A DNA stretch of 55,620 bases, the filler included, from Sluysia triapertura (lineage: Eukaryota): the NCBI GenBank assembly GCA_046118255.1. It is 4 parts of 4 records of this genome, joined end to end, with 100 filler letters (N's around TTAATTAATTAA, not from the genome) between each part and the next. Parts side by side here need not be neighbours in the genome. Positions count along the whole stretch, not along the records: positions 39,013 to 55,620 come from JBJNIA010200153.1; 3 more parts are not named here. One strand, 5' to 3'. Below the pieces are notes generated by a model. The model made no database searches. It worked only from the letters and a program-made list of their open reading frames with translations, and had not been told where the DNA came from. This document shows positions 22,350 to 54,287 of the stretch, piece after piece; the stretch's first letter is position 1; each line of letters begins with the position of its first letter. The position numbers and the translations under genes are program-made.

Positions 22350-22830
22350 AGTATCAAAAAACTATTCTAAAATGTTGGAAAACAATTGCTTTCTCCAAAA
22401 ATCCTCCTGAAATTAACTACTAGACACTTACAAATCAATTCAAATATTCAAAATTCATGATTTTTATCACTTAATCCCTAACATCACAGAAAGACAATAT
22501 TACTTAAAATATCAAGAAAATAAATCACATTTTCAGCATTGTATAACCATCTCTTGAACATAACCAAAATCATATCATTTTTAACATCACATAATTACCT
22601 TTTAGAATATACCAAAACATAGCCTATGATCTATCTTATTCACATCCACTAAACTACTCTTTTTCAACATACTTATAATTCATAATCTTTTAACATCCAA
22701 ACATAAATGTACATTTATGATCAATTTTAAACATTTATATTATCTCAAAATACCTTCTACACTCAAATTCGTCTTCAATAAGAAACATTAAATAGCATTT
22801 AAAAATTCACTTGAGGCATTCCACACATTA
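22350..22830 (+). mobile_element. Mariner relic with G-depleted sense strand
   Basis: Remnants NPPEIT TRHL, IPNITERQ, F*HHIIT (FL.RIIT) and SYS..P.NY.LF; 12 G vs 59 C in 22441-22740. Confidence 0.6.
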
Positions 22831-30599: not shown

Positions 30600-31090
30600 A
30601 CGTAGTAAGGATTAGAAAGTATAAAATTAGTAAATGAAGTAACAAAAATATTATTAACAATAATTTTAGTAATAAAATTTAAAAGTATGATGAATTTTGA
30701 TTGTAAAATATGAGATTGTTAAAATGTATGAAAATTGTTCTTGTGTTTCATCTATGTTGTTTGTTGATCTGATATTTTGTGTTAGATTATGCTAAAGTTT
30801 GTTTAGGATTTGTATTTGATTGTGTTGATGTTTGCCATTAATTAGAGTGTTTTGATTATGAGCTCACCACAGTCCACTGCATCAATACTGCATCATTATA
30901 ATAATATAATAATATTTTTCCCTTTACAAATTCATCACTCAATTATATTATGTAACACAGCTCAACATGTAGAGTTACATACAAAAAAGTTACGATCTTA
31001 GATATTCTTGTCACTATATTCATGATAAAATGGATCAAGTTTATCGATATCGAGTATTTCAAAATTCAGAATTAACAAATCACAGAAGAC
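30600..31090 (-). mobile_element. Mariner relic with an internal skew switch
   Basis: Minus strand DPF...IVT, DA.G.V.EL, NINTIKY (TINA..Y) and TIFIH.N; homologous to 40830-41050. Confidence 0.6.
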
Positions 31091-39012: not shown

Positions 39013-39192
39013 TATGAGTTAGTGAGGTGTTGTGATTATCAAATGTTGTTTTATGATGTTTGTGTTGGTGTAATTCGGAAGTAAAAAAATATGATTATTG
39101 TGAAGATTGCGTTTTAGTGAAATTTGATTTATGAATATAAGATTTGATATTTTATTAGGTATGAATTATGAGTGTTGTCCACTACAATCATA
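39013..39192 (-). mobile_element. Mariner relic with G-depleted sense strand
   Basis: Minus strand DCSG...FIPN...LP......NIIKQH-DN..PH; plus strand has 40 G vs 3 C in 39013-39177. Confidence 0.6.
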
Positions 39193-39624: not shown

Positions 39625-40330
39625 GATTAATAATAATAATATATTAATTTATATTGCGCTCATATCTACTGCGAAAGTACTCAAAAGCGCTTAAAGTAAA
39701 TAATTAACCGTAATATTTCTGAAACAGAAAGAACTTTGCTTTTTTCTTAAATATTTCATAGTCTTCAAGCAATTTGTATATTTTTGAGACAAACAGTATA
39801 CAACCTATCACCTAGCTTGTTATCACTTTCGATCCTGTATAGATTATTGTGTCAATGAAATATTCATCTTGGTTTCCAATTTTCGTATTATTTCTAAAAG
39901 GTATTCAGGACTTCCGTAACGTAAGCATTTGTAAATTATTGTCATGATTTTAAATTCTATTTTTACTTTCATTGGCAACCAATGTAATTCTTTAAGATAA
40001 GGTGTTATATGAGATCTTCCAACTTGGAGAATTAATTTTGCTGCTTGATTAATTATTAATTGTAATTTTCACTTTCTATCTGAAATTGAAAATCTATGTT
40101 GCTAATTCTCATTGAGTGAACAATAAGTTTAGCTGTTTCTTTATTAATATTTTCGAATATGTGATATCTTATTTAATTGATATTTACACTTTTTAACAAT
40201 ACAATTAATATTTTCTTCCATGTTCATTTTTGAATCGTATAATAACCTATATTTCGTACTTTCTGCTTTGCATCGAGTGTCTTGAAATATTTTAACTGAA
40301 AATTTCTCAATAAAAACTTATTTCAAAAAC
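39625..40330 (-). mobile_element. L2-clade LINE 3' fragment
   Basis: KLQLIINQAAKLI...RSHITPYLKELHWLP...IEFKIMT...FKKKAKFFLFQKYY* followed by an L2-type tail. Confidence 0.88.
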
Positions 40331-40479: not shown

Positions 40480-40546
40480 TGTTAGACTTCATAAAATGGA
40501 CTGACCGGGAATCGAAACCGTCCCTCTCGCCGCACAGTTCGATGAA
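40480..40546 (-). repeat. tRNA-derived (3' half) SINE-like repeat, copy 2
   Basis: ttcatcgaactgtgcggcgagagggacggtttcgattcccggtcagtccattttatgaagtctaaca on the minus strand. Confidence 0.75.
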
Positions 40547-40829: not shown

Positions 40830-41050
40830 TGTTCCCATCATTTCAGAACGCATTAGCTGGTGACTCCACAGCCAGTTTCAGACAATTTTTATAATATATT
40901 ATAAAAATTGTGCTTGTGTTTTATGTATGCCGTTTGATGATTTGATACTTTGTATAAGATTCTGTTGATGTTTGCCTATGATTAGAGTGTTTTGATTTGT
41001 AGTTTACCATAGTATTTATTATAAACTCAAAAATAAACAAAGCATCCAGA
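40830..41050 (-). mobile_element. Mariner relic, same subfamily as 30600-31090
   Basis: MLCLF remnant; block tgttgatgtttgcc...attagagtgttttgatt shared with 30823-30857. Confidence 0.55.
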
Positions 41051-41182: not shown

Positions 41183-41863
41183 GTTATTTTTCACTGTAAG
41201 ACAAAAAAAAGAAAATTTGTTATTATTTGTACCTAATACATTGAAAATACTATTTTTGGAAATTTATATTAAGAGAAGAAAATTTAAGAAACCTGCATTG
41301 GGTATTTTCAAATAATTTTATAAATTAAATTTAGTATAATAAAATTATAACCTAAATTTGTATTTTAGCACCATTCGTTTATGCGTTATCTAAAATAAAT
41401 TTTTAGTCAATCATTTTGATTTTGTGAAGTTTGAAAAATATTTCAGTTTCATTTCTAACGATAAATTAAATTAAGGATTAAAAATAACTCGTTAATATTT
41501 AAGTTTTGTAAAGATTGAGATTTTTATAAATCACGAATAATTTTAAGATTAAATCAAGTAAATGTTTAAAATAAATTTTTATTTTTTAAATAATTATGAA
41601 ACAAACATGAGTTATCGATTGAAAATAACAGATTGAAAAATACAAATTATTTTAAATAAAGTGATAAACTGTTACTGTTTAAGTTCAAAACTAAAATTTT
41701 TATCAATCACTAATCACAATTAAAAGAGTAGTTTTAATTTCGATGTGGAATCATCACATAAGGATAATTTATTAAATTTATAACTTAAAGTTATAAGATA
41801 CTTTATTTACTTCTTTTAACTTCACTAATAATAGTTAACATTACTTATAAGTTTAAAACATAC

Positions 41864-42048
41864 CCATTTTCAACAGCTAAATCAAAAAGTTCTACATAAA
41901 AGTGCTCATCTTCTTCATACGTTTCGTCATCTAAAATTTTAATAGCAATAGTGCACTGATTTTCATGTGGCAAAAATTTCAAAACACCACTTTGAGCGAC
42001 ATAATCACTTCCAGCTAATGCTGTTCCATCTGTTGTTTTATACTTTAC
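41864..42048 (-). CDS. NCX: Na+/Ca2+ exchanger exon, Calx-beta (CBD1) second half
   Basis: VKYKTTDGTALAGSDYVAQSGVLKFLPHENQCTIAIKILDDETYEEDEHFYVELFD; ttcag acceptor, gtatgt donor. Confidence 0.93.
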
Positions 42049-42379
42049 CTGAATAAATAGTTTACATATATGGAAGTGTTACAGTCAATAAATAAAAATA
42101 CGAATATGTTTGAGAAAAAATTTTAAAGTAATATGACAATTTATAATATATGAAGAATAATGACGCCTTCAGGATAATTTTCCAGATGTTTTATTATTTT
42201 AAAAATGAGGAAATTAATTAATTTTTAATTATTTCTAAAATGAAAACTCCTTTTATTTTAGAAATTATCATATTTTTTATTAATTATGTTGGGAAATTTA
42301 TTTAATGCACCATAAATTTAGAATATTTTAAAATATTCAAGATTATTTTCTATGCTATAAAAATATTAATTAGTTTGCT

Positions 42380-43260: not shown

Positions 43261-43695
43261 ATGTTTTCCTAAAATATTAATAGTTAAGTGCTTGAATACC
43301 AGTGTTTCTTATAAAAAAATATTTAATACAATATCTTTTCAAAACTGAGGATTATATTATTGATGTACATGTTTGTGTATTTCTTTTAAAATAATTTAAC
43401 TATTTATGGCCTGAAAGGATGCTTTTGGTTTCTTAGAAATAAGTAAATTAATGTTATAACAGAATCAAAATTAGGTCCAACTATTACTATATTAAATCAT
43501 TACACAGATTCAATAGTGCAAACACATTAAATTAAAAATATTCATTGATCAACTCGAAACATTATTATAAATTTAAATATTTGTAACTGTAGATAAACGA
43601 AAATATTAAACCTTTGCAAAAATACTTTATAATCTATAAATAAAGCATTTTATATATTTTTTATACTATTCAGTACAAATACAACGAAAACAAAC

Positions 43696-43889
43696 ATTTA
43701 AAGTTGATTCCATATATCCACCACTTCGTTTAACTATCATGTTTACTAATCGAGCATTTTCCATCACCGTATAGTGCAGCGGATCAAAATAAACAACTTG
43801 TTCTTTCATATTTTTATTTCCTTCAGAACCTTCATCGTCAACCACATTTTGTAATTTAAGCAAATATTCTGACATAATGTTAACCCCAC
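43696..43889 (-). CDS. NCX: Na+/Ca2+ exchanger exon, start of CBD1
   Basis: GGVNIMSEY...VVYFDPLHYTVMENARLVNMIVKRSGGYMESTLN; ttgcag acceptor; phase-0 donor joins 42048 in frame. Confidence 0.92.
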
Positions 43890-44199
43890 CTGCAAAACAT
43901 ACGATTGAATATTGTAAAATTTATGTAAATCACTATAAAAACTTACAAGCATTAAATGAAAAATTTATGCGAATAATTTTAATTATCTGTATTAAATGAA
44001 TTCATCATTAAGTACATAAATGCTCAGTTCAGTATCTAAATCGTTAACAAATTGAAGCAATTTTTCTCTACCTATTTTGAATGTGGTATTTTTATGTAAA
44101 ATTTAATAAATTAGATAGTACTGTAACGATGATAATTTACTTTCGACGTCAGTATATACTTAACAAATTAGCTAATTGGGACGGGAAAAATATGATTTT

Positions 44200-44940
44200 G
44201 GAAAGTGGCGTGCATCAAACATCGAATTCTTTTCGTTTATGAAATTATGCTGATAAAATATGTAGTCTTTTGCTCGTGCAAAAGTTTACTAAAGTGGCTT
44301 TTGGAATCTGATTTGGAACCAGAAAAAAGTACAATAGACCGTTGCGAAATCATAAAATATTATATTAATAAACCTGGAATGTTTAAATATAACATAGAAA
44401 CTCAATCATCATAAACAATACTACACATTCATAACATCTTAACAACAACTCGATTAACACTTTCAACCATTCACTCCACACATTACTTCGATATTTAATC
44501 TCGAATAATTCATAATACTCACTCATAAGATACTCTATCAAACAAACCATAACCATAATACATTATACAGAAATCATAAATACAATAACACCATTTAACA
44601 ACGTTAACAAATACTTCAGAAATAGAAAACATTTACATTAAAATCTTTAACCAACCACACCAAGTTAAAGCTACTTCATTTATACATATCCATTATCATC
44701 AACATTTATTCCTAATAACATTATAAACACGTTAAGATTATTTCGTAATCGTCTTTTAAAACTAAAATAACTTTGACCTTTCATTAAGCATCTCAAACTT
44801 ATTTTTAATTACAAACTTTTAATAAATTTCAATAAGCTTTCCTAACATTATTCTTTTCAATTACAACTCGATTCATTCCTATTTCATTTAAAGACAGACA
44901 ATTAAGCTTTTAACAATTCATTATCTTAATAAGAAGCAAC
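44200..44940 (+). mobile_element. Mariner relic with extreme G depletion of the sense strand
   Basis: HRILFVYE, TIDRCEI, QPF..HIT, FIPNNIIN and YS.QL..D.FLFHLK remnants in mariner order; 10 G vs 73 C in 44401-44700. Confidence 0.65.
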
Positions 44941-45333
44941 AACGATAGCGGAGACATAATATACCTCGCTATCGTTGTTCTTTCTCGCTATTGAATCAGT
45001 TTTATTTCTCTAATTTTTATATATATGTATATAGAAGGTAAAGAATACAACAGAAGAAAGATCGTGTTAAAGTTTCAATGGGTATTTTATGCGATCTTTA
45101 ATTAATAATAATGATAATAACAATGTTATTATTGTTATTATTATTATTATTCTTTTCAATTAAAAACATAAAATTAATTTTTGTTGTCGCCATCATCAAT
45201 AGTGACACTTCATTTATTATGTTCATTTGCATGTCACTATTGATGATGGTTTAGTATCATAAAACAAGCAATTCGTCAACATCCAATCACAACAAAAAAA
45301 CTATACATAATACCATACAAGTTGTGATTGGAT
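44938..45333. repeat. Three perfect short inverted repeats (13, 18 and 13 bp arms)
   Basis: 44938-44979, 45190-45249 and 45281-45333. Confidence 0.9.
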
Positions 45334-46637: not shown

Positions 46638-47306
46638 TATTGGGTTGGTGCATAAGTTCGTGCGGTTTTTTACAATTGTGAAAAATGAGTAGTGACCAAG
46701 AATAAAAACCATGAAAAAAAACTTCCAGATTCCAAAATTAATTTATTAAATCATTAGAAAAAGCAAATATCTCAGCAGATTGATGGCGAACGAGAAAGAT
46801 GCAGAAATCGAAACACGTTAATTTTTGTTACTTTTTTTAGAATGTGAGGTACCTATGATCCAAGCTTTTGAACTTTTCCAATTTTTTTGAGATGTCGAGG
46901 CTTGTCCAAGCACTCCTGTAGATTGACGCGGATCATCATGAATCAATTAGTTCAAAAAATCTTCATCAAAGTCACTATGTCGACCTGACTAAGGTGCATC
47001 GTTTACGTCAAAATTTCCAATGTTAAATTTCGAAAGCCACTTTTGTGCTGTTCGTCATTGACTGCCTTTTCTCCATAAACGCAACAAATCATTCTGGTGG
47101 CTTCTGCTGAACTTAAATGTTGATTAAAATAGATAAGAAGTGGATTCCGGTAATATTCTTGTTTATCCACCTGAAGATAATGAAAGTGAAAGTTAGTCTT
47201 AAATGATTTAAATAGATAATACAGCTAAATGATTATAACTCAAATCAGTTAAAACAAGACCTTGGTACGTTTTCTCTGAAACAAATAAAAATGCACCAAC
47301 CCAATA
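46638..47306 (-). mobile_element. Internally deleted mariner with both TIRs
   Basis: TA-TTGGGTTGGTGCAT TIRs at both ends; SAEATRMICCVYGE, RTAQKW...GNFDVNDAP*SGR and KLGS*VPH. Confidence 0.93.
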
Positions 47307-47309
47307 GGT

Positions 47310-48095
47310 GGATCGCGCGAAACATTAAGTTTGTATTTGGCTGTAATGTTACTATACAGCAGACAGTATTAAATTTGATCTCCAAATTTGTGCAGGTAAA
47401 TTTGATCATGTGGTCGCTAAGTATCAAAGGTCACTGTTGAGTCTGATCCATCTAAAAGTGTCTATGAATTATCGTTGAACTTTGGTGTCAGCAAACAAAT
47501 AATATTAACTCATTTAGCTCAAATTGGTAAAGTGAAAATTTGGCTCAGTTGGTTTCACATTTGGAATCAAAAGTATTTGGAAGCTATATTGATGTTGCTT
47601 TTCGTCAGAAATCTTATCCGTTTTTGAATCGAATTGTTACTTATGATGAGAAATCGATCAAGTATGACAATCTCAAACGTTCAAAGCAGTGATTGGATAG
47701 GGATGAATCACCTAAACATACTCAAAAACCAAATATTCATCAAAAGAATCTGAAGTGTAATCCATTATGATTTCATGAAACTTGGTTAATCGACCGCAAC
47801 AACCAACTGGACAAAACTTAAATTCAAAGAACATATATTGGTCAATAGATTGACTTCTATCTTATAGCATGATAACGCTAAATCACACACTGAACAAATA
47901 AGGGTGGCAAAACTACAGTAATTGGAGTTGGAACTTCATCATCTTCCATACTTACCAAACATAAGCTCCACTGATTACTACTTTTTCCGCAATTTGGACA
48001 ACTTTTTAATTGAAAAACAATTTAATTCCTACAATTATGCATAACTAGCCTTCCAGGAATTTATTGACTCTCATCTACCAGGATTTTATACCATC
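47310..48095 (+). mobile_element. Mariner (DD34D) transposase pseudogene, relatively young
   Basis: PFLNRIVTYDEK, HDNAKSH and HLPYLPN.APTDYYFF motifs; balanced composition (30 G, 28 C in 47581-47760). Confidence 0.93.
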
Positions 48096-49159: not shown

Positions 49160-51180
49160 ATTTTTTACTTTATCTGCGTCGACATGTTCCATATCATTAC
49201 AACATTAGGAATACTATAAAGTTCAACATTATAATTCTAATGTTATTTCATCACCTCTGACATTTTCATATAATTATTATATTCAATCATTTTTAAATAA
49301 ATTAATTAATAAATGTACTTTTATCTTTTATTCTATCATCGATGAGAATAAAGATATCCCACCACCCTTGTGTGAGAAATTTAATTTTTGTTACAATGAT
49401 GAATGTTATGTTTGTATTGGGAAGGTTCCTAATATATGACATCACACATTTAATGTGTGAAATTCGAGTTCCTGAATTTACTGCTCGTGAAGTATGGACG
49501 CCATGGGCATTTGGTAAAAATTTTATAATTATATATAGGCAACCATGTTCTGTTACAATTAAAGTTATGTATGATTTAAGTAATAAAGTATCGTTTAGTT
49601 TCAACTTTGCTAAAGTAAGTCTAATTTCTATCAAATTTTTTAGTACTTAATAAAAAATTTATACTCGTCGTTTCAGTTATACGATATAATATAATATAAT
49701 ACGACTTTGTCGTTATGTCAGTCATTTATTTTATTTCGGAATTTGTTAAAATATTATGTTATAAAGTGTAATAAAAAATTTCCTTTTGGATTTAATTTAA
49801 AGATTTAATTAAAGATTTATAATGTTGTATTATGTAATAACAACTTAAGTCTAATTAAACTTGCAAGACCTAAAATTTATACCCTCAATAATACTTACTT
49901 TATTTTTACACTATAAGCTGTAACCCTTATATCTATTTCATCAAATCCAACAGCTTTAATGTTATTTAATTTGAGTTTTAATTTCTATATATTCTTCTAT
50001 TAATCATCCTTGAATACAATGGCTTTTTGGCGAATGGAGATTGTTAGAGGATACGGTGTGTAAGGGTGTCGTAGCTTGTAAATTGAAAGGATCCACATTT
50101 TCTGAAGTTTTAGATAAAAACCTTATAAGTGCATTTATTAATTAATTTAATTGTTTGAAAATTATTTTTACTCAATAACTTTTTTATATCGTGGTGGCAT
50201 AAAATGAAATACAATGATAAAATTTATTCGTGGTATGAACACAAAGATAGCGCCAAATGCCTCGTTGTAGATAACGTAAAATAATTAGTTTCATTAATTT
50301 TTTCTTTTTGAAGTTAAATTACTGTGTATTATTATAAATCTATAAATCCACATGGTTATATGGATCTATGTGTGCATTTTATAAAAATTGATTTGACATT
50401 TTATATGTATTTGACTATGTTTTTGACTTTGACTTTTACCTGATAATTAATTATGTAGTAAAATTTCATTTGATTGTAAAATATTGATTTTCAGAAGTTT
50501 AAAATAATTATTTGGATAAACTAAATAAACGTAAGTAATTTTAAAATTAAATTATTTCTGAATTTAAGCATTTTTATTAAATCCTTATATTTTGTTATTA
50601 ATCATATATTTATTTAAACATTTTTGTTATTAAAATATTATATATTTACTTTGTTTAAATTATTAAAATATTTTAATGGAGTCAAGGTCGGTTCCAGAAC
50701 TACTATAAAATAACACAACGTTTACAATAGCTTTCAATACACGATTTTACAAAAATGCTTGGTATACAATTGGTGATTGAAAATTGTAATCAGAAGGAAC
50801 CGATTATTGAACAATTATTAATTAATCTTTAAATATTCGTTAGTTTACTTTTTTAAGGTGATACCTACTAGGTACAAAGGAAAATTTACTCAAAATCATT
50901 AATCTTAATAATTGTAGGACTATTTAAAGTTATATCATAAAATACTTATTAAAATAATCGTTTATTAAAGTAACTTAAAAAAGTTAATTTCGTAATTTAT
51001 TATTTCTTATTGTTGCACAATAATCTTTTAATGACGTACTTTAGTGACAAAGTTTTTTCTTATTTAGTGAATAATTAATCATATTTAAATTTTATAGATA
51101 TAAAATAATTAAAATTAATACCAGTTTTGAATTTATTCGGGATTTATCGAATTCGTAACATAAATCATTTAACGATTCCC
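49160..51180 (-). CDS. Unassigned multi-exon gene or pseudogene, possibly C2-domain containing
   Basis: ORF 49302..49634 (IRLTLAKLKLND..LKSYITLIVTE...GWWDIF) plus NYNVELYSIP resemble AIDA/PI3K-type C2 beta-sandwich motifs. Further GT-AG exons lie near 49900-50120, 50172-50280 and 51122-51180, but splice phases are not fully reconciled. Confidence 0.3.
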
Positions 51181-52879: not shown

Positions 52880-53705
52880 AGGCCTAAAGTTCCATGTAGT
52901 ACAAATAACTATAGTAATCTAAAATTTGTTAGACGCGGCTGATAGCTCAATTTACGCCGAAAATACCGAATTTCTGCTAGCTTTTTTTTACTGTGAGGAC
53001 CAAATAAAATTAAATATCAAATACGACATACTTGGTGAAAACGAAGTCACATTAAATTGGTTTCATAAAGAGAAAGTAGGTAAATATCTTCATGATTTAT
53101 TAACATTTCCAATACCAACATTTGGATTTTTATGATTAAGAACAGTATTCTTAAGCTTAACTTCCTTCCACCAAACATTTCACAAAGCATATTCCCATTA
53201 CGTGTCACCGGTGTGGCTTTTAACGGGATACAATTGTCCACTTATTATGTCTTTGCCCTCAAACTGTCATTGGCCGTATAGTCAGACAATAAGATTCTCG
53301 AATGTTTATATAGTAAACTTAAACAAATGGGCTTCTCAGTCAAAATGGACACTCGAACCCTCCTTACTGGTGACAATCGAAGACCTGATATACAAGCGCA
53401 AGTTACAAATTCTTCCCAAGTTTTTCTCAAAGTCTCCCATTGATGATTATGAGAAATTTAAGACCACCCTAACTTTCAATATTACGAAATATTCCGACTT
53501 GAGAGATAAGCTCCAATTACAACTTAAATGTCAGGTCTCCTTTGACACGTTTCTCGTTGGAGCACTTGGTTCTTGGGATCCTGAAAATGATATCCTTCTG
53601 AAAAAACTAGGCTTCAGTAGGGCTGATATAATTGGTTTAGCTCGCCAGTGTATCAAACTCTTCATTGAATCCTCCTTTAAAATCTACAAGGACCATTCTG
53701 CATAA
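52880..53705 (+). mobile_element. 5'-truncated non-LTR retrotransposon with a restriction-like endonuclease (NeSL/Utopia/R2-group)
   Basis: CHRCG...DTIVHLLCLCP zinc knuckle, then KY.DL...L and FLVGALGSWDPEND..LKKLG...SFKIYKDH C-terminus; disablements present. Confidence 0.88.
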
Positions 53706-54219: not shown

Positions 54220-54287
54220 TTCATCGAACTGCGCAGCGAGAGATTCCGGGTTCGATCCCTGGTCAATCCATTTTATGAGGTCTAACA
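54220..54287 (+). repeat. tRNA-derived (3' half) SINE-like repeat, copy 3
   Basis: ttcatcgaactgcgcagcgagagattccgggttcgatccctggtcaatccattttatgaggtctaaca. Confidence 0.78.

What the first reader, a model, noticed from the sequence alone, without database searches (positions are those of the whole stretch)
44401..44700. Dinucleotide fingerprint of the hypermutation: TG and GG erased, CG and AG spared
SEEN: all 10 surviving Gs in these 300 nt are in CG (4) or AG (6); TG and GG are absent although CA is abundant on the same strand. In the mirror-image tracts surviving Cs are mostly CpG (2 of 3 at 39013-39177) or CpT (4 of 7 at 30661-30860). The 22441-22740 tract lacks GG but keeps several TG, so the preference is not absolute. 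KNOWN: CpA-to-TpA is the Neurospora RIP preference, and animal methyl-CpG decay would remove CpG first. INFERENCE: targets are CpA/CpC on one strand with CpG relatively protected, the opposite of ordinary methylation decay.
Basis: partly seen in the sequence, partly recalled or inferred. Interest (0 to 1): 0.7.

Follow-up and report, generated by a model that had tools for sequence, protein, structure and literature searches.

The report
One-strand hypermutated DNA tract
A 540-base stretch next to the exons of an animal sodium/calcium-exchanger gene has lost nearly all G on one strand in a context-dependent way; it looks like the scar of a one-strand mutation burst, but no parent copy could be found, so the cause stays open.

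Summary
The G-poor tract really spans 44397-44935. It is far beyond chance, and only one other tract in the piece is significant: the mirror-image C-poor tract at 39016-39177. The two tracts are not homologous, yet they share composition and dinucleotide profile, which points to a shared process.

TG loss among surviving Gs is real (1 of 23). GG absence is uninformative. CG and AG are only relatively spared, with about 20-35% retained.

The tracts also carry a context-bound excess of C. G>A alone explains it only if the parent was about 45% GC. Ordinary local DNA given both G>A and T>C reproduces all 16 dinucleotide counts.

In both tracts the sharp edge lies at the 3' end of the strand that lost C, and density fades away from it. 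This fits deamination of an exposed 3' single strand.

No parent copy, transposon identity or reads could be obtained, so polarity is inferred, not shown. Membership in RIP fails on host and is otherwise untested. If real in an invertebrate-like animal genome, this would be a new variant of a known kind.

The parts
44397..44935 (-). Main G-poor (on + strand) tract. The inferred mutated strand is the minus strand (C>T, probably also A>G). Sharp edge at 44397-44400, fading edge near 44935.
44401..44700 (-).
39016..39177 (+). Mirror-image C-poor tract (G40, C3), cut by the piece's left edge. Sharp edge at 39177/39178. Not homologous to the main tract, but it has the same composition and dinucleotide profile once reverse-complemented.
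44932..44985 (.). Hairpin 1 at the fading end of the tract (13 bp perfect core, 16-nt loop). Its Gs are intact.
   Evidence: z -5.2
45104..45151 (.). Hairpin 2, an A/T-rich (TAA)n/(TTA)n palindrome.
   Evidence: z -7.0
45190..45249 (.). Hairpin 3, with an 18-bp perfect stem and a 24-nt loop.
   Evidence: z -7.9
45281..45333 (.). Hairpin 4, with a 13-bp perfect stem and a 27-nt G-free loop.
   Evidence: z -5.5
43690..43880 (-). Likely coding exon of a Na+/Ca2+ exchanger on the minus strand, about 520 nt from the tract. It reads like the start of a Calx-beta domain, but this is my reading only: Pfam gave no Calx-beta hit for this piece.
41848..42078 (-). Calx-beta exon (Pfam PF03160, E 1.3e-17). 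It shows that the host is an animal and that the gene runs on the minus strand.

Best explanation
The tract is the footprint of a burst of transitions that hit only one DNA strand while that strand was single-stranded.

On the window's minus strand, about three quarters or more of the cytosines became T. Loss was nearly complete at CpA and less complete at CpT and CpG. Probably a quarter to a third of the adenines also became G; this happened after a pyrimidine and did not happen next to G. Both changes are amino-to-keto deaminations (C to U, A to inosine). Copying the damaged strand then fixed them.

The geometry fits a 3' single-stranded overhang. One option is a resected chromosome break or one-ended repair intermediate whose end lay at 44397-44400; another is a single-stranded intermediate of inserted DNA. 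The second, unrelated tract at 39016-39177 would be the same process on the other strand.

What is shown: the skew, its edges, the context bias, the profile shared by two non-homologous tracts, and the geometry. What is inferred: that these are mutations at all, since no parent was found; the A>G component; the single-strand intermediate; and the agent, which would be one or more unknown deaminases.
For: The skew is far beyond chance, and only two such tracts exist in 16.6 kb.

The tract is as complex as its dinucleotide shuffles and has no tandem repeat, so it is not simple sequence.

The two tracts are not homologous, yet they share composition (A 44, T 29-30, C 24-25, G 2-3 %) and dinucleotide profile: CC o/e is 0.41-0.55 against 1.04 in the background, and CA o/e is 1.29-1.37.

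The C excess is context-bound in both tracts. C makes up 0.55 of pyrimidines before a purine, 0.32 before T and 0.24 before C. The rest of the piece gives 0.28, 0.21 and 0.26. Fisher tests give 1.6e-5 combined, and 9e-4 and 5e-3 for the tracts separately.

Ordinary local DNA given G>A plus T>C reproduces all 16 dinucleotide counts (sum z2 = 12). G>A alone gives 78 on local DNA and 40 on the piece's own transposon segments.

TG loss among survivors has p 0.001 to 6e-5.

Geometry: in both tracts the sharp edge is at the 3' end of the C-losing strand. In tract 1, G rises with distance from that edge (rho 0.65, p 0.03), T rises too (rho 0.64, p 0.03), and C tends to fall (rho -0.56, p 0.07).

Strand-coordinated clusters in resected or break-induced single-stranded DNA are established in yeast and tumours (PMC6786661, PMC9262586). 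Paired C>T and A>G on a long-exposed single strand is the known pattern of the mitochondrial heavy strand (PMC9561281, PMC11792237).
Against: No parent or orthologous copy could be obtained, so no substitution is actually polarised.

The A>G component rests on composition statistics. The rates used were fitted to the same data. About 3% of ordinary 485-nt windows reach tract 1's context log-odds, and 9% reach its CC depletion.

The purine/pyrimidine pattern of the tract is somewhat atypical of local DNA. It has fewer runs of 5 or more (1.7-2.7 against 3.4 per 100 nt) and P(same class) is 0.445 against 0.512 +/- 0.033.

The density, about 20 changes per 100 nt, is far above known kataegis.

No mirror tract lies on the other side of the proposed break.

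No single-stranded-DNA deaminase of adenine is known in animals.

The 3'-neighbour dependence of the C loss is unlike AID/APOBEC enzymes.

A screen of 19 invertebrate genomes found no DNA-editing clusters (PMC4866542).
Confidence: 0.4

Rival explanations
1. A RIP-like or DNMT-type process, or a cytidine deaminase, made C>T changes only, with a CpA preference. The target was one strand of a repeated or mobile element copy (mariner or other) that was much richer in G+C (about 40-48%) than the host genome.
For: CpA on the mutated strand is almost erased, while CpG and CpT survive. This matches the RIP dinucleotide preference (PMC2621366). The dependence on the 3' rather than the 5' neighbour is what a dinucleotide-reading, methyltransferase-like enzyme would give. 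Base composition is compatible with G>A acting on a strand-symmetric sequence of about 46% GC. Transposon segments of the piece are richer in G+C than the background. Mirror-image tracts fit random insertion orientation.
Against: The tract has no second copy in the piece in any alphabet. It has no transposase or RT signal and no relatives by word search. The piece's own mariner and LINE segments reach only 17-19% C and have normal CC o/e (0.87-1.17), against 21-25% C and CC o/e 0.41-0.55 in both tracts. G>A applied to those segments fits poorly (sum z2 = 40). TpA/ApT is not raised over the background. The host is an animal, and RIP is described as fungal-specific (PMC2621366). DNA transposons and invertebrate genomes showed no editing clusters in the one large screen (PMC4866542).
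Confidence: 0.2
2. There was no hypermutation. The tracts are pieces of a sequence class that is G-poor on one strand by nature. This could be a family of elements with skewed strands, or a selected G+U-rich, C-free RNA region on the sense strand of the exchanger gene.
For: No parent was found by any route. Two tracts with the same composition and dinucleotide profile could be two parts of one skewed family. The purine/pyrimidine pattern is a little unlike the local background. The minus strand, which is the gene's sense strand, is 68% G+T.
Against: The tracts are not homologous to each other where they can be compared. The sequence is complex, non-repetitive and non-coding in every frame and code. 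There is no Rfam match. The two tracts lie in opposite orientation, which argues against a role in one transcript. The knife-sharp edge, the gradient and the specific loss of TG look like a process, not a design.
Confidence: 0.15
3. Long-term mutation asymmetry acted in place. A transcription or R-loop hot spot kept the non-template strand single-stranded in the germ line, and C>T and A>G accumulated there to near equilibrium.
For: For tract 1 the C-losing strand is the sense (non-template) strand of the exchanger gene. The resulting G-over-C skew on the non-template strand is the kind that favours R-loops; this rests on my own knowledge and was not tested. Paired C>T and A>G on an exposed strand is known from mitochondrial DNA (PMC9561281).
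Against: The rest of the same transcribed region shows no such skew. The gradient runs the wrong way for a promoter-proximal effect on the minus strand: density is highest at the downstream, sharp edge. Tract 2 has the opposite polarity. The magnitude is far beyond reported nuclear asymmetries. No RNA run is available.
Confidence: 0.08
4. The tract is a sequencing, library or assembly artefact. One option is a damaged single-stranded stretch of one molecule that was filled in during library preparation and then carried into a low-coverage assembly.
For: Only one public run holds the stretch. It has 736 million letters and only 0.67 of the sampled words, so the assembly may rest on thin data. 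Tract 2 touches the piece's edge in the orientation seen for damaged 5' ends. I could not lay reads.
Against: Laboratory deamination is about 2e-8 calls per base, and rises only 29-fold after 6 h at 72 C (PMC9949150). That is many orders of magnitude below the roughly 0.8 per C seen here. The context bias and the survival of CpG argue for an enzyme or biology. The piece's edge may be an arbitrary cut rather than a contig end.
Confidence: 0.08
5. The tract is a nuclear insertion of organelle or foreign DNA that has an extreme strand skew, for example mitochondrial DNA whose coding strand is T+G-rich and C-poor.
For: The composition of the minus strand (T 44, A 29, G 24, C 3 %) goes in the direction of flatworm or nematode mitochondrial coding strands; that comparison rests on my own knowledge. 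An insertion would explain the sharp edge, and a shared source would explain the shared profile of the two tracts.
Against: There is no long open frame in mitochondrial codes 4, 5 or 9. Pfam finds no mitochondrial protein family. ARAGORN in mitochondrial mode finds no tRNA, and Rfam finds no rRNA. C at 2-4% is more extreme than in whole mitochondrial genomes.
Confidence: 0.03

Closest known systems
Repeat-induced point mutation (RIP) of Neurospora and other fungi
   Same: Dense C:G>T:A change with a CpA preference, one strand affected within a tract, and CpG not the first target.
   Different: RIP is fungal and acts on duplicated DNA before meiosis. Here the host is an animal, no duplicate is visible, and TpA/ApT is not raised over the background. 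There is also an unexplained C excess that RIP does not produce.
APOBEC3/AID editing of retroelement cDNA in vertebrates (PMC4866542)
   Same: Strand-biased G>A clusters fixed in the genome, up to 'ultra-edited' copies.
   Different: Those motifs are set by the base 5' of the edited C (GG, GA or GxA on the sense strand). Here the 3' neighbour dominates, and a 5' T is the least edited context. No retroelement identity was found. That screen found nothing in 19 invertebrate genomes or in DNA transposons.
Strand-coordinated mutation clusters (kataegis) in single-stranded DNA at resected breaks and in break-induced replication (PMC6786661, PMC9262586)
   Same: Changes are all on one strand. The mutated strand is the 3'-ended one relative to a sharp end point. 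Density fades with distance, and the tract neighbours inverted-repeat structures.
   Different: The density here is about ten to a hundred times higher and near saturation. The tract is fixed in a germ line. It has a possible A>G partner, and there is no known deaminase in the host.
Heavy-strand deamination asymmetry of animal mitochondrial DNA (PMC9561281, PMC11792237)
   Same: C>T and A>G occur together on the strand that stays single-stranded. This gives an A+C-rich, very G-poor complement, with C>T closer to saturation.
   Different: That is a slow, genome-wide equilibrium in an organelle. This is a 0.5-kb nuclear tract with a sharp edge and no sign of mitochondrial genes.
ADAR hyper-editing of double-stranded RNA
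   Same: The inferred A>G affects a quarter to a third of adenines and avoids a 5' G.
   Different: ADAR acts on RNA, does not touch C, and favours a 3' G, whereas here a 3' G is avoided. A route back into DNA would also be needed.

Membership tests
RIP | C:G>T:A transitions relative to an unmutated copy | not testable with these tools
   No parent copy is in the piece. Public searches were blank.
RIP | Acts on duplicated sequence | tested here: inconclusive
   No second copy in 16.6 kb in any alphabet. The rest of the genome is not visible.
RIP | CpA>TpA preference on the mutated strand | tested here: met
   TG survives 1 of 23 times (p 0.001 to 6e-5). Estimated retention is TG 2%, against CG 34% and AG plus GG 30%.
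RIP | RIP indices shifted relative to unaffected DNA | tested here: not met
   TpA/ApT is 0.91 against a background of 0.90. (CpA+TpG)/(ApC+GpT) is 1.03 against 1.16.
RIP | Fungal host with RID-type machinery | tested here: not met
   Calx-beta exon of an animal-type Na+/Ca2+ exchanger and mariner HTH_48. The host's enzymes are not visible.
APOBEC-type retroelement editing | G>A on the sense strand of a retroelement | tested here: inconclusive
   No RT, gag or integrase signal in any tract frame. The ambiguity-aware alignment to the piece's LINE and mariner peptides did not exceed shuffles.
APOBEC-type retroelement editing | Motif set by the base 5' of the edited C (TC or CC) | tested here: not met
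   G share among purines, by the + strand 3' neighbour, is A 0.105, C 0.054 and T 0.054. So a 5' T on the edited strand is the least edited context. The strong effect is on the other side.
Single-stranded-DNA mutation cluster at a break | All changes on one strand, which is the 3'-ended strand at the end point | tested here: met
   Tract 1: minus strand, sharp edge at its 3' end (44397-44400). Tract 2: plus strand, sharp edge at its 3' end (39177). Gradient shown. Polarity is assumed, not shown.
Single-stranded-DNA mutation cluster at a break | Mutation density of a few per 100-1000 bp | tested here: not met
   About 20% of positions are inferred to have changed.
Nuclear copy of mitochondrial DNA | Mitochondrial genes, tRNAs or rRNA recognisable | tested here: not met
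ADAR hyper-editing footprint | A>G clusters with 5' G avoided and 3' G favoured | tested here: inconclusive
   The inferred new Gs avoid G on both sides: the C share among pyrimidines is not raised next to C on either side. No parent copy is available.

The most novel reading that the evidence does not exclude
An animal that lacks classical APOBEC3 enzymes has a germ-line activity that deaminates both cytosine (CpA first, CpG relatively protected) and adenine on exposed single-stranded DNA. The activity nearly saturates 0.2-0.5 kb tracts that start at a break or at an insertion junction.
Probability: 0.15. Interest if true: 0.85.

Novelty: new variant of a known kind. Interest (0 to 1): 0.55.

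Why it matters
Dense one-strand hypermutation fixed in a genome is known from fungi (RIP) and from vertebrates (APOBEC-edited retroelements). The one broad screen found none in 19 invertebrate genomes (PMC4866542). A CpA-directed process in an AT-rich animal genome, possibly acting on both C and A, would point to an unknown deaminase or an unknown repair-linked mutagenic route. It would also give a ready genomic read-out, namely skew tracts with a sharp 3' edge, for finding that activity. If the tracts turn out to be an intrinsically skewed element family or an artefact of thin data, the finding is ordinary.

Tried and rejected
Searches for a parent copy inside the piece all found nothing. These were blastn with G collapsed to A on both strands, self-blast, an ungapped purine/pyrimidine scan, and a direct alignment of the two tracts.

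Protein routes also failed. Pfam on ten tract pieces gave nothing. The word search with the 59-aa tract frame was blank. An exact-product look-up of two window ORFs found nothing on record. The ambiguity-aware codon alignment to the piece's mariner and LINE peptides had no power, because the score is positive on shuffles.

Routes to an orthologous locus failed too. The exon word search was blank, and the metagenome scan found no relative. The exons were searched one by one and were not joined into a spliced model.

A>R degenerate patterns of the tract and a hairpin pattern found no match in the viral, metagenome and prokaryote collections.

Reads: one run was found. No external search tool received those places afterwards. 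Local scripts that scanned the whole piece did read them from the session's file.

The host taxon could not be narrowed. The atlas and word searches of the LINE ORF were uninformative.

The mitochondrial-origin tests were negative. Rfam and tandem repeats gave nothing.

The purine/pyrimidine periodicity test and the Markov test had too little power to tell a coding-like parent from an intron-like one.

The large all-protein search was not used, because the tract frames show no family signal and a spurious 59-aa frame was unlikely to repay the cost.

Full report
**Observation**

44401-44700 holds A131, T86, C73 and G10. Four Gs are in CG and six in AG, with no TG and no GG, while CA occurs 43 times. 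GC skew reaches -0.76.

A maximal-segment score for C against G gives 31.9 for 44401-44885 (C107, G18). The maximum in 100 shuffles of the piece is 12.3. The only other significant tract is the mirror-image one at 39016-39177 (G40, C3), which is cut by the piece's edge.

Binning at 50 nt shows a knife-sharp left edge: G falls from 11 per 50 nt to 0 at 44397-44400. The right edge fades near 44935. I therefore place the tract at 44397-44935.

**Setting**

A Calx-beta exon lies on the minus strand at 41848-42078 (Pfam E 1.3e-17). A further exon-like frame lies at about 43690-43880. My reading of it as the same exchanger's Calx-beta domain had no Pfam support. So the tract lies about 520 nt from an exon, in an intron or upstream region of an animal Na+/Ca2+ exchanger gene.

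Degenerate mariner fragments lie at 46.8-48.1 kb (HTH_48 at 47006-47224, minus strand). LINE remnants lie at 39.8-40.3 and 52.9-53.7 kb. The exons were searched one at a time and were not joined.

The rest of the piece is 25% G+C, with CpG o/e 1.01. This argues against heavy germ-line CpG methylation.

**What the tract is not**

- It has no tandem structure, and it is as complex as its dinucleotide shuffles.
- It has no Rfam match and no Pfam match in any frame piece.
- It has no long frame in standard or mitochondrial codes and no mitochondrial tRNA.
- It has no relative in the piece, whether compared in plain letters, with G collapsed to A, or as purines and pyrimidines, on either strand.
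- It does not align to the mirror tract.

**The fingerprint**

Over 44397-44935, 23 Gs survive. They are preceded by A (14), C (8), T (1) and G (0). P(at most one TG) is 0.001 from the tract's own T content. It is 6e-5 from the share of Gs that follow T elsewhere in the piece.

I then assumed a C>T-only history and strand symmetry of the parent. Estimated ancestral counts are TG about 45, CG about 24, AG 31 and GG 13. Survivors are 1, 8, 13 and 0. The contrast between TG and the rest has Fisher p 7e-5.

Two parts of the claim do not hold.
- The absence of GG is expected anyway. Only 0.5 pairs should survive at the mean retention of 0.19, and a G whose 5' G mutates is then scored as AG.
- CG and AG are spared only relatively, since most of them are gone too.

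The weaker dependence on the other neighbour runs against APOBEC3-type motifs: a 5' T on the edited strand is the least edited context. RIP indices do not differ from this AT-rich background.

Both tracts are rich in C as well as poor in G: 21-25% C against 12.9% in the background. Both are also poor in T (29-33% against 38.7%). After reverse-complementing the mirror tract, the two have almost the same composition (A 44, T 29-30, C 24-25, G 2-3 %) and the same dinucleotide profile. CC o/e is 0.41-0.55 against 1.04, and CA o/e is 1.29-1.37.

The extra C is context-bound. C makes up 0.55 of pyrimidines before a purine, 0.32 before T and 0.24 before C. Elsewhere the values are 0.28, 0.21 and 0.26. 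Each tract shows this separately.

Simulation gives the following:
- Ordinary local DNA given G>A plus T>C at these context rates reproduces all 16 dinucleotide counts (sum z2 = 12).
- G>A alone on local DNA fails (78).
- G>A alone on the piece's own transposon segments fits poorly (40).

There are caveats.
- The rates were fitted on the same data.
- About 3% of ordinary 485-nt windows reach tract 1's context log-odds.
- The tract's purine/pyrimidine run pattern is somewhat unlike local DNA.
- A parent of about 45% G+C with few CC/GG pairs cannot be excluded.

On the minus strand, the two changes would be C>T and A>G. Both are deaminations of amino bases.

**Geometry**

In both tracts the sharp edge lies at the 3' end of the strand that lost C. 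For tract 1 this is the minus strand, with the edge at 44397-44400. For tract 2 it is the plus strand, with the edge at 39177/39178.

In tract 1, G rises with distance from that edge (rho 0.65, p 0.03). T rises as well (rho 0.64, p 0.03), and C tends to fall (rho -0.56, p 0.07). In tract 2, no C survives within 66 nt of the edge.

This is what a 3' overhang left by 5'-3' resection of a break would give. The exposed strand is longest-lived next to the end. Strand-coordinated clusters of this kind are established in yeast and tumours (PMC6786661, PMC9262586).

The agreement is two out of two, which has a chance of 0.25. There is no mirror tract on the other side of the proposed break.

Directly beyond the fading end lie four strong hairpins within 400 nt, with z-scores of -5.2 to -7.9. 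Three of them have perfect 13-18 bp stems. Their Gs and TGs are intact. Whether they belong to the event (template switching in single-stranded DNA, compare PMC10164571) or to an unrelated element is open.

**Mechanism and rivals**

My best reading, at about 0.4, is a one-off deamination-type hypermutation of an exposed single strand, fixed by fill-in synthesis. C>U would be near saturation, with CpA first, and A>I would probably accompany it. The agent is unknown.

The rivals are:
- An intrinsically skewed sequence class (0.15).
- Slow transcription-linked or R-loop-linked asymmetry. This is disfavoured by the direction of the gradient and by the normal composition of the rest of the transcribed region (0.08).
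- An artefact of thin data (0.08). Only one run of 736 million letters holds the locus. However, laboratory deamination rates are many orders of magnitude too low (PMC9949150).
- An organelle insert (0.03).

**Limits**

The polarity of every inferred change rests on composition, not on an alignment to a parent. After that, no external search received those places. Two word searches for relatives, one metagenome scan by protein and four pattern scans were blank, and a third word search, on the LINE ORF, also gave nothing. The host could not be named beyond 'animal with introns, mariners and LINEs, 25% G+C'.

**Novelty**

RIP is described as fungal-specific (PMC2621366). APOBEC footprints were found in vertebrates, but not in 19 invertebrate genomes or in DNA transposons (PMC4866542). 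My literature searches found no animal RIP-like report. If the tract is a true mutation scar in an invertebrate-like genome, it is a new variant of a known kind. If adenine is also deaminated, it is stranger still. Because the key step, polarisation against a parent, could not be done, I score interest at 0.55.

Noticed in passing
window 44397-44935: Nine of the 23 surviving Gs sit in 4-nt palindromes (TCGA x4, ACGT x2, AGCT x3). Random placement on the tract's purines gives 3.75 +/- 1.7, with P(>=9) = 0.0065. Six of the eight surviving CpGs are TCGA or ACGT (p 0.01). This is a post hoc observation. It might mean site-specific protection of C, or it might be chance.
   Followed up: partly
window 44932-45333: Four consecutive hairpins within 400 nt, right after the fading end of the tract (stems of 13-22 bp, three of them perfect, DNA-fold z -5.2 to -7.9). 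No Rfam match. The origin is unknown: template-switch scars, a small foldback element or young hairpin RNA genes are all possible.
   Followed up: partly
window 40480-40546 and 54220-54287: An inverted pair of 68-nt segments, 84% alike, that carry a tRNA T-arm-like GGTTCGA(T/A)(T/C)CC motif. These are probably two copies of a tRNA-derived SINE. ARAGORN calls no tRNA.
   Followed up: no
window 46821-47224 (-) and 47421-48041 (+): Two degenerate mariner-type transposase remnants lie head to head. One has HTH_48 on the minus strand; the other has the DNA-binding and C-terminal catalytic motifs on the plus strand. Both are full of stops, they are unrelated at the DNA level, and they lack the one-strand skew of the tract.
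   Followed up: partly
window 39847-40317 (-) and 53136-53702 (+): LINE-type open frames without a Pfam hit. One is a 189-codon open frame at 53136-53702, with no relatives in the word search and only weak atlas hits.
   Followed up: partly
window 40882-40911: A perfect 30-nt palindrome.
   Followed up: no
window 49869-49951 and 50032-50090: A short G-poor segment (C20, G2) lies 80 nt before a short C-poor segment (G22, C3). Each is below the shuffle threshold, and they are not inverted-repeat arms of each other.
   Followed up: partly
window 44150-44396: The 250 nt left of the sharp edge are richer in G+C than the background (30-36%, G over C) and hold a 72-codon open frame that runs into the tract's first bases. 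It has no Pfam match, and C is not depleted, so this is not a mirror cluster.
   Followed up: partly
   Followed up: no
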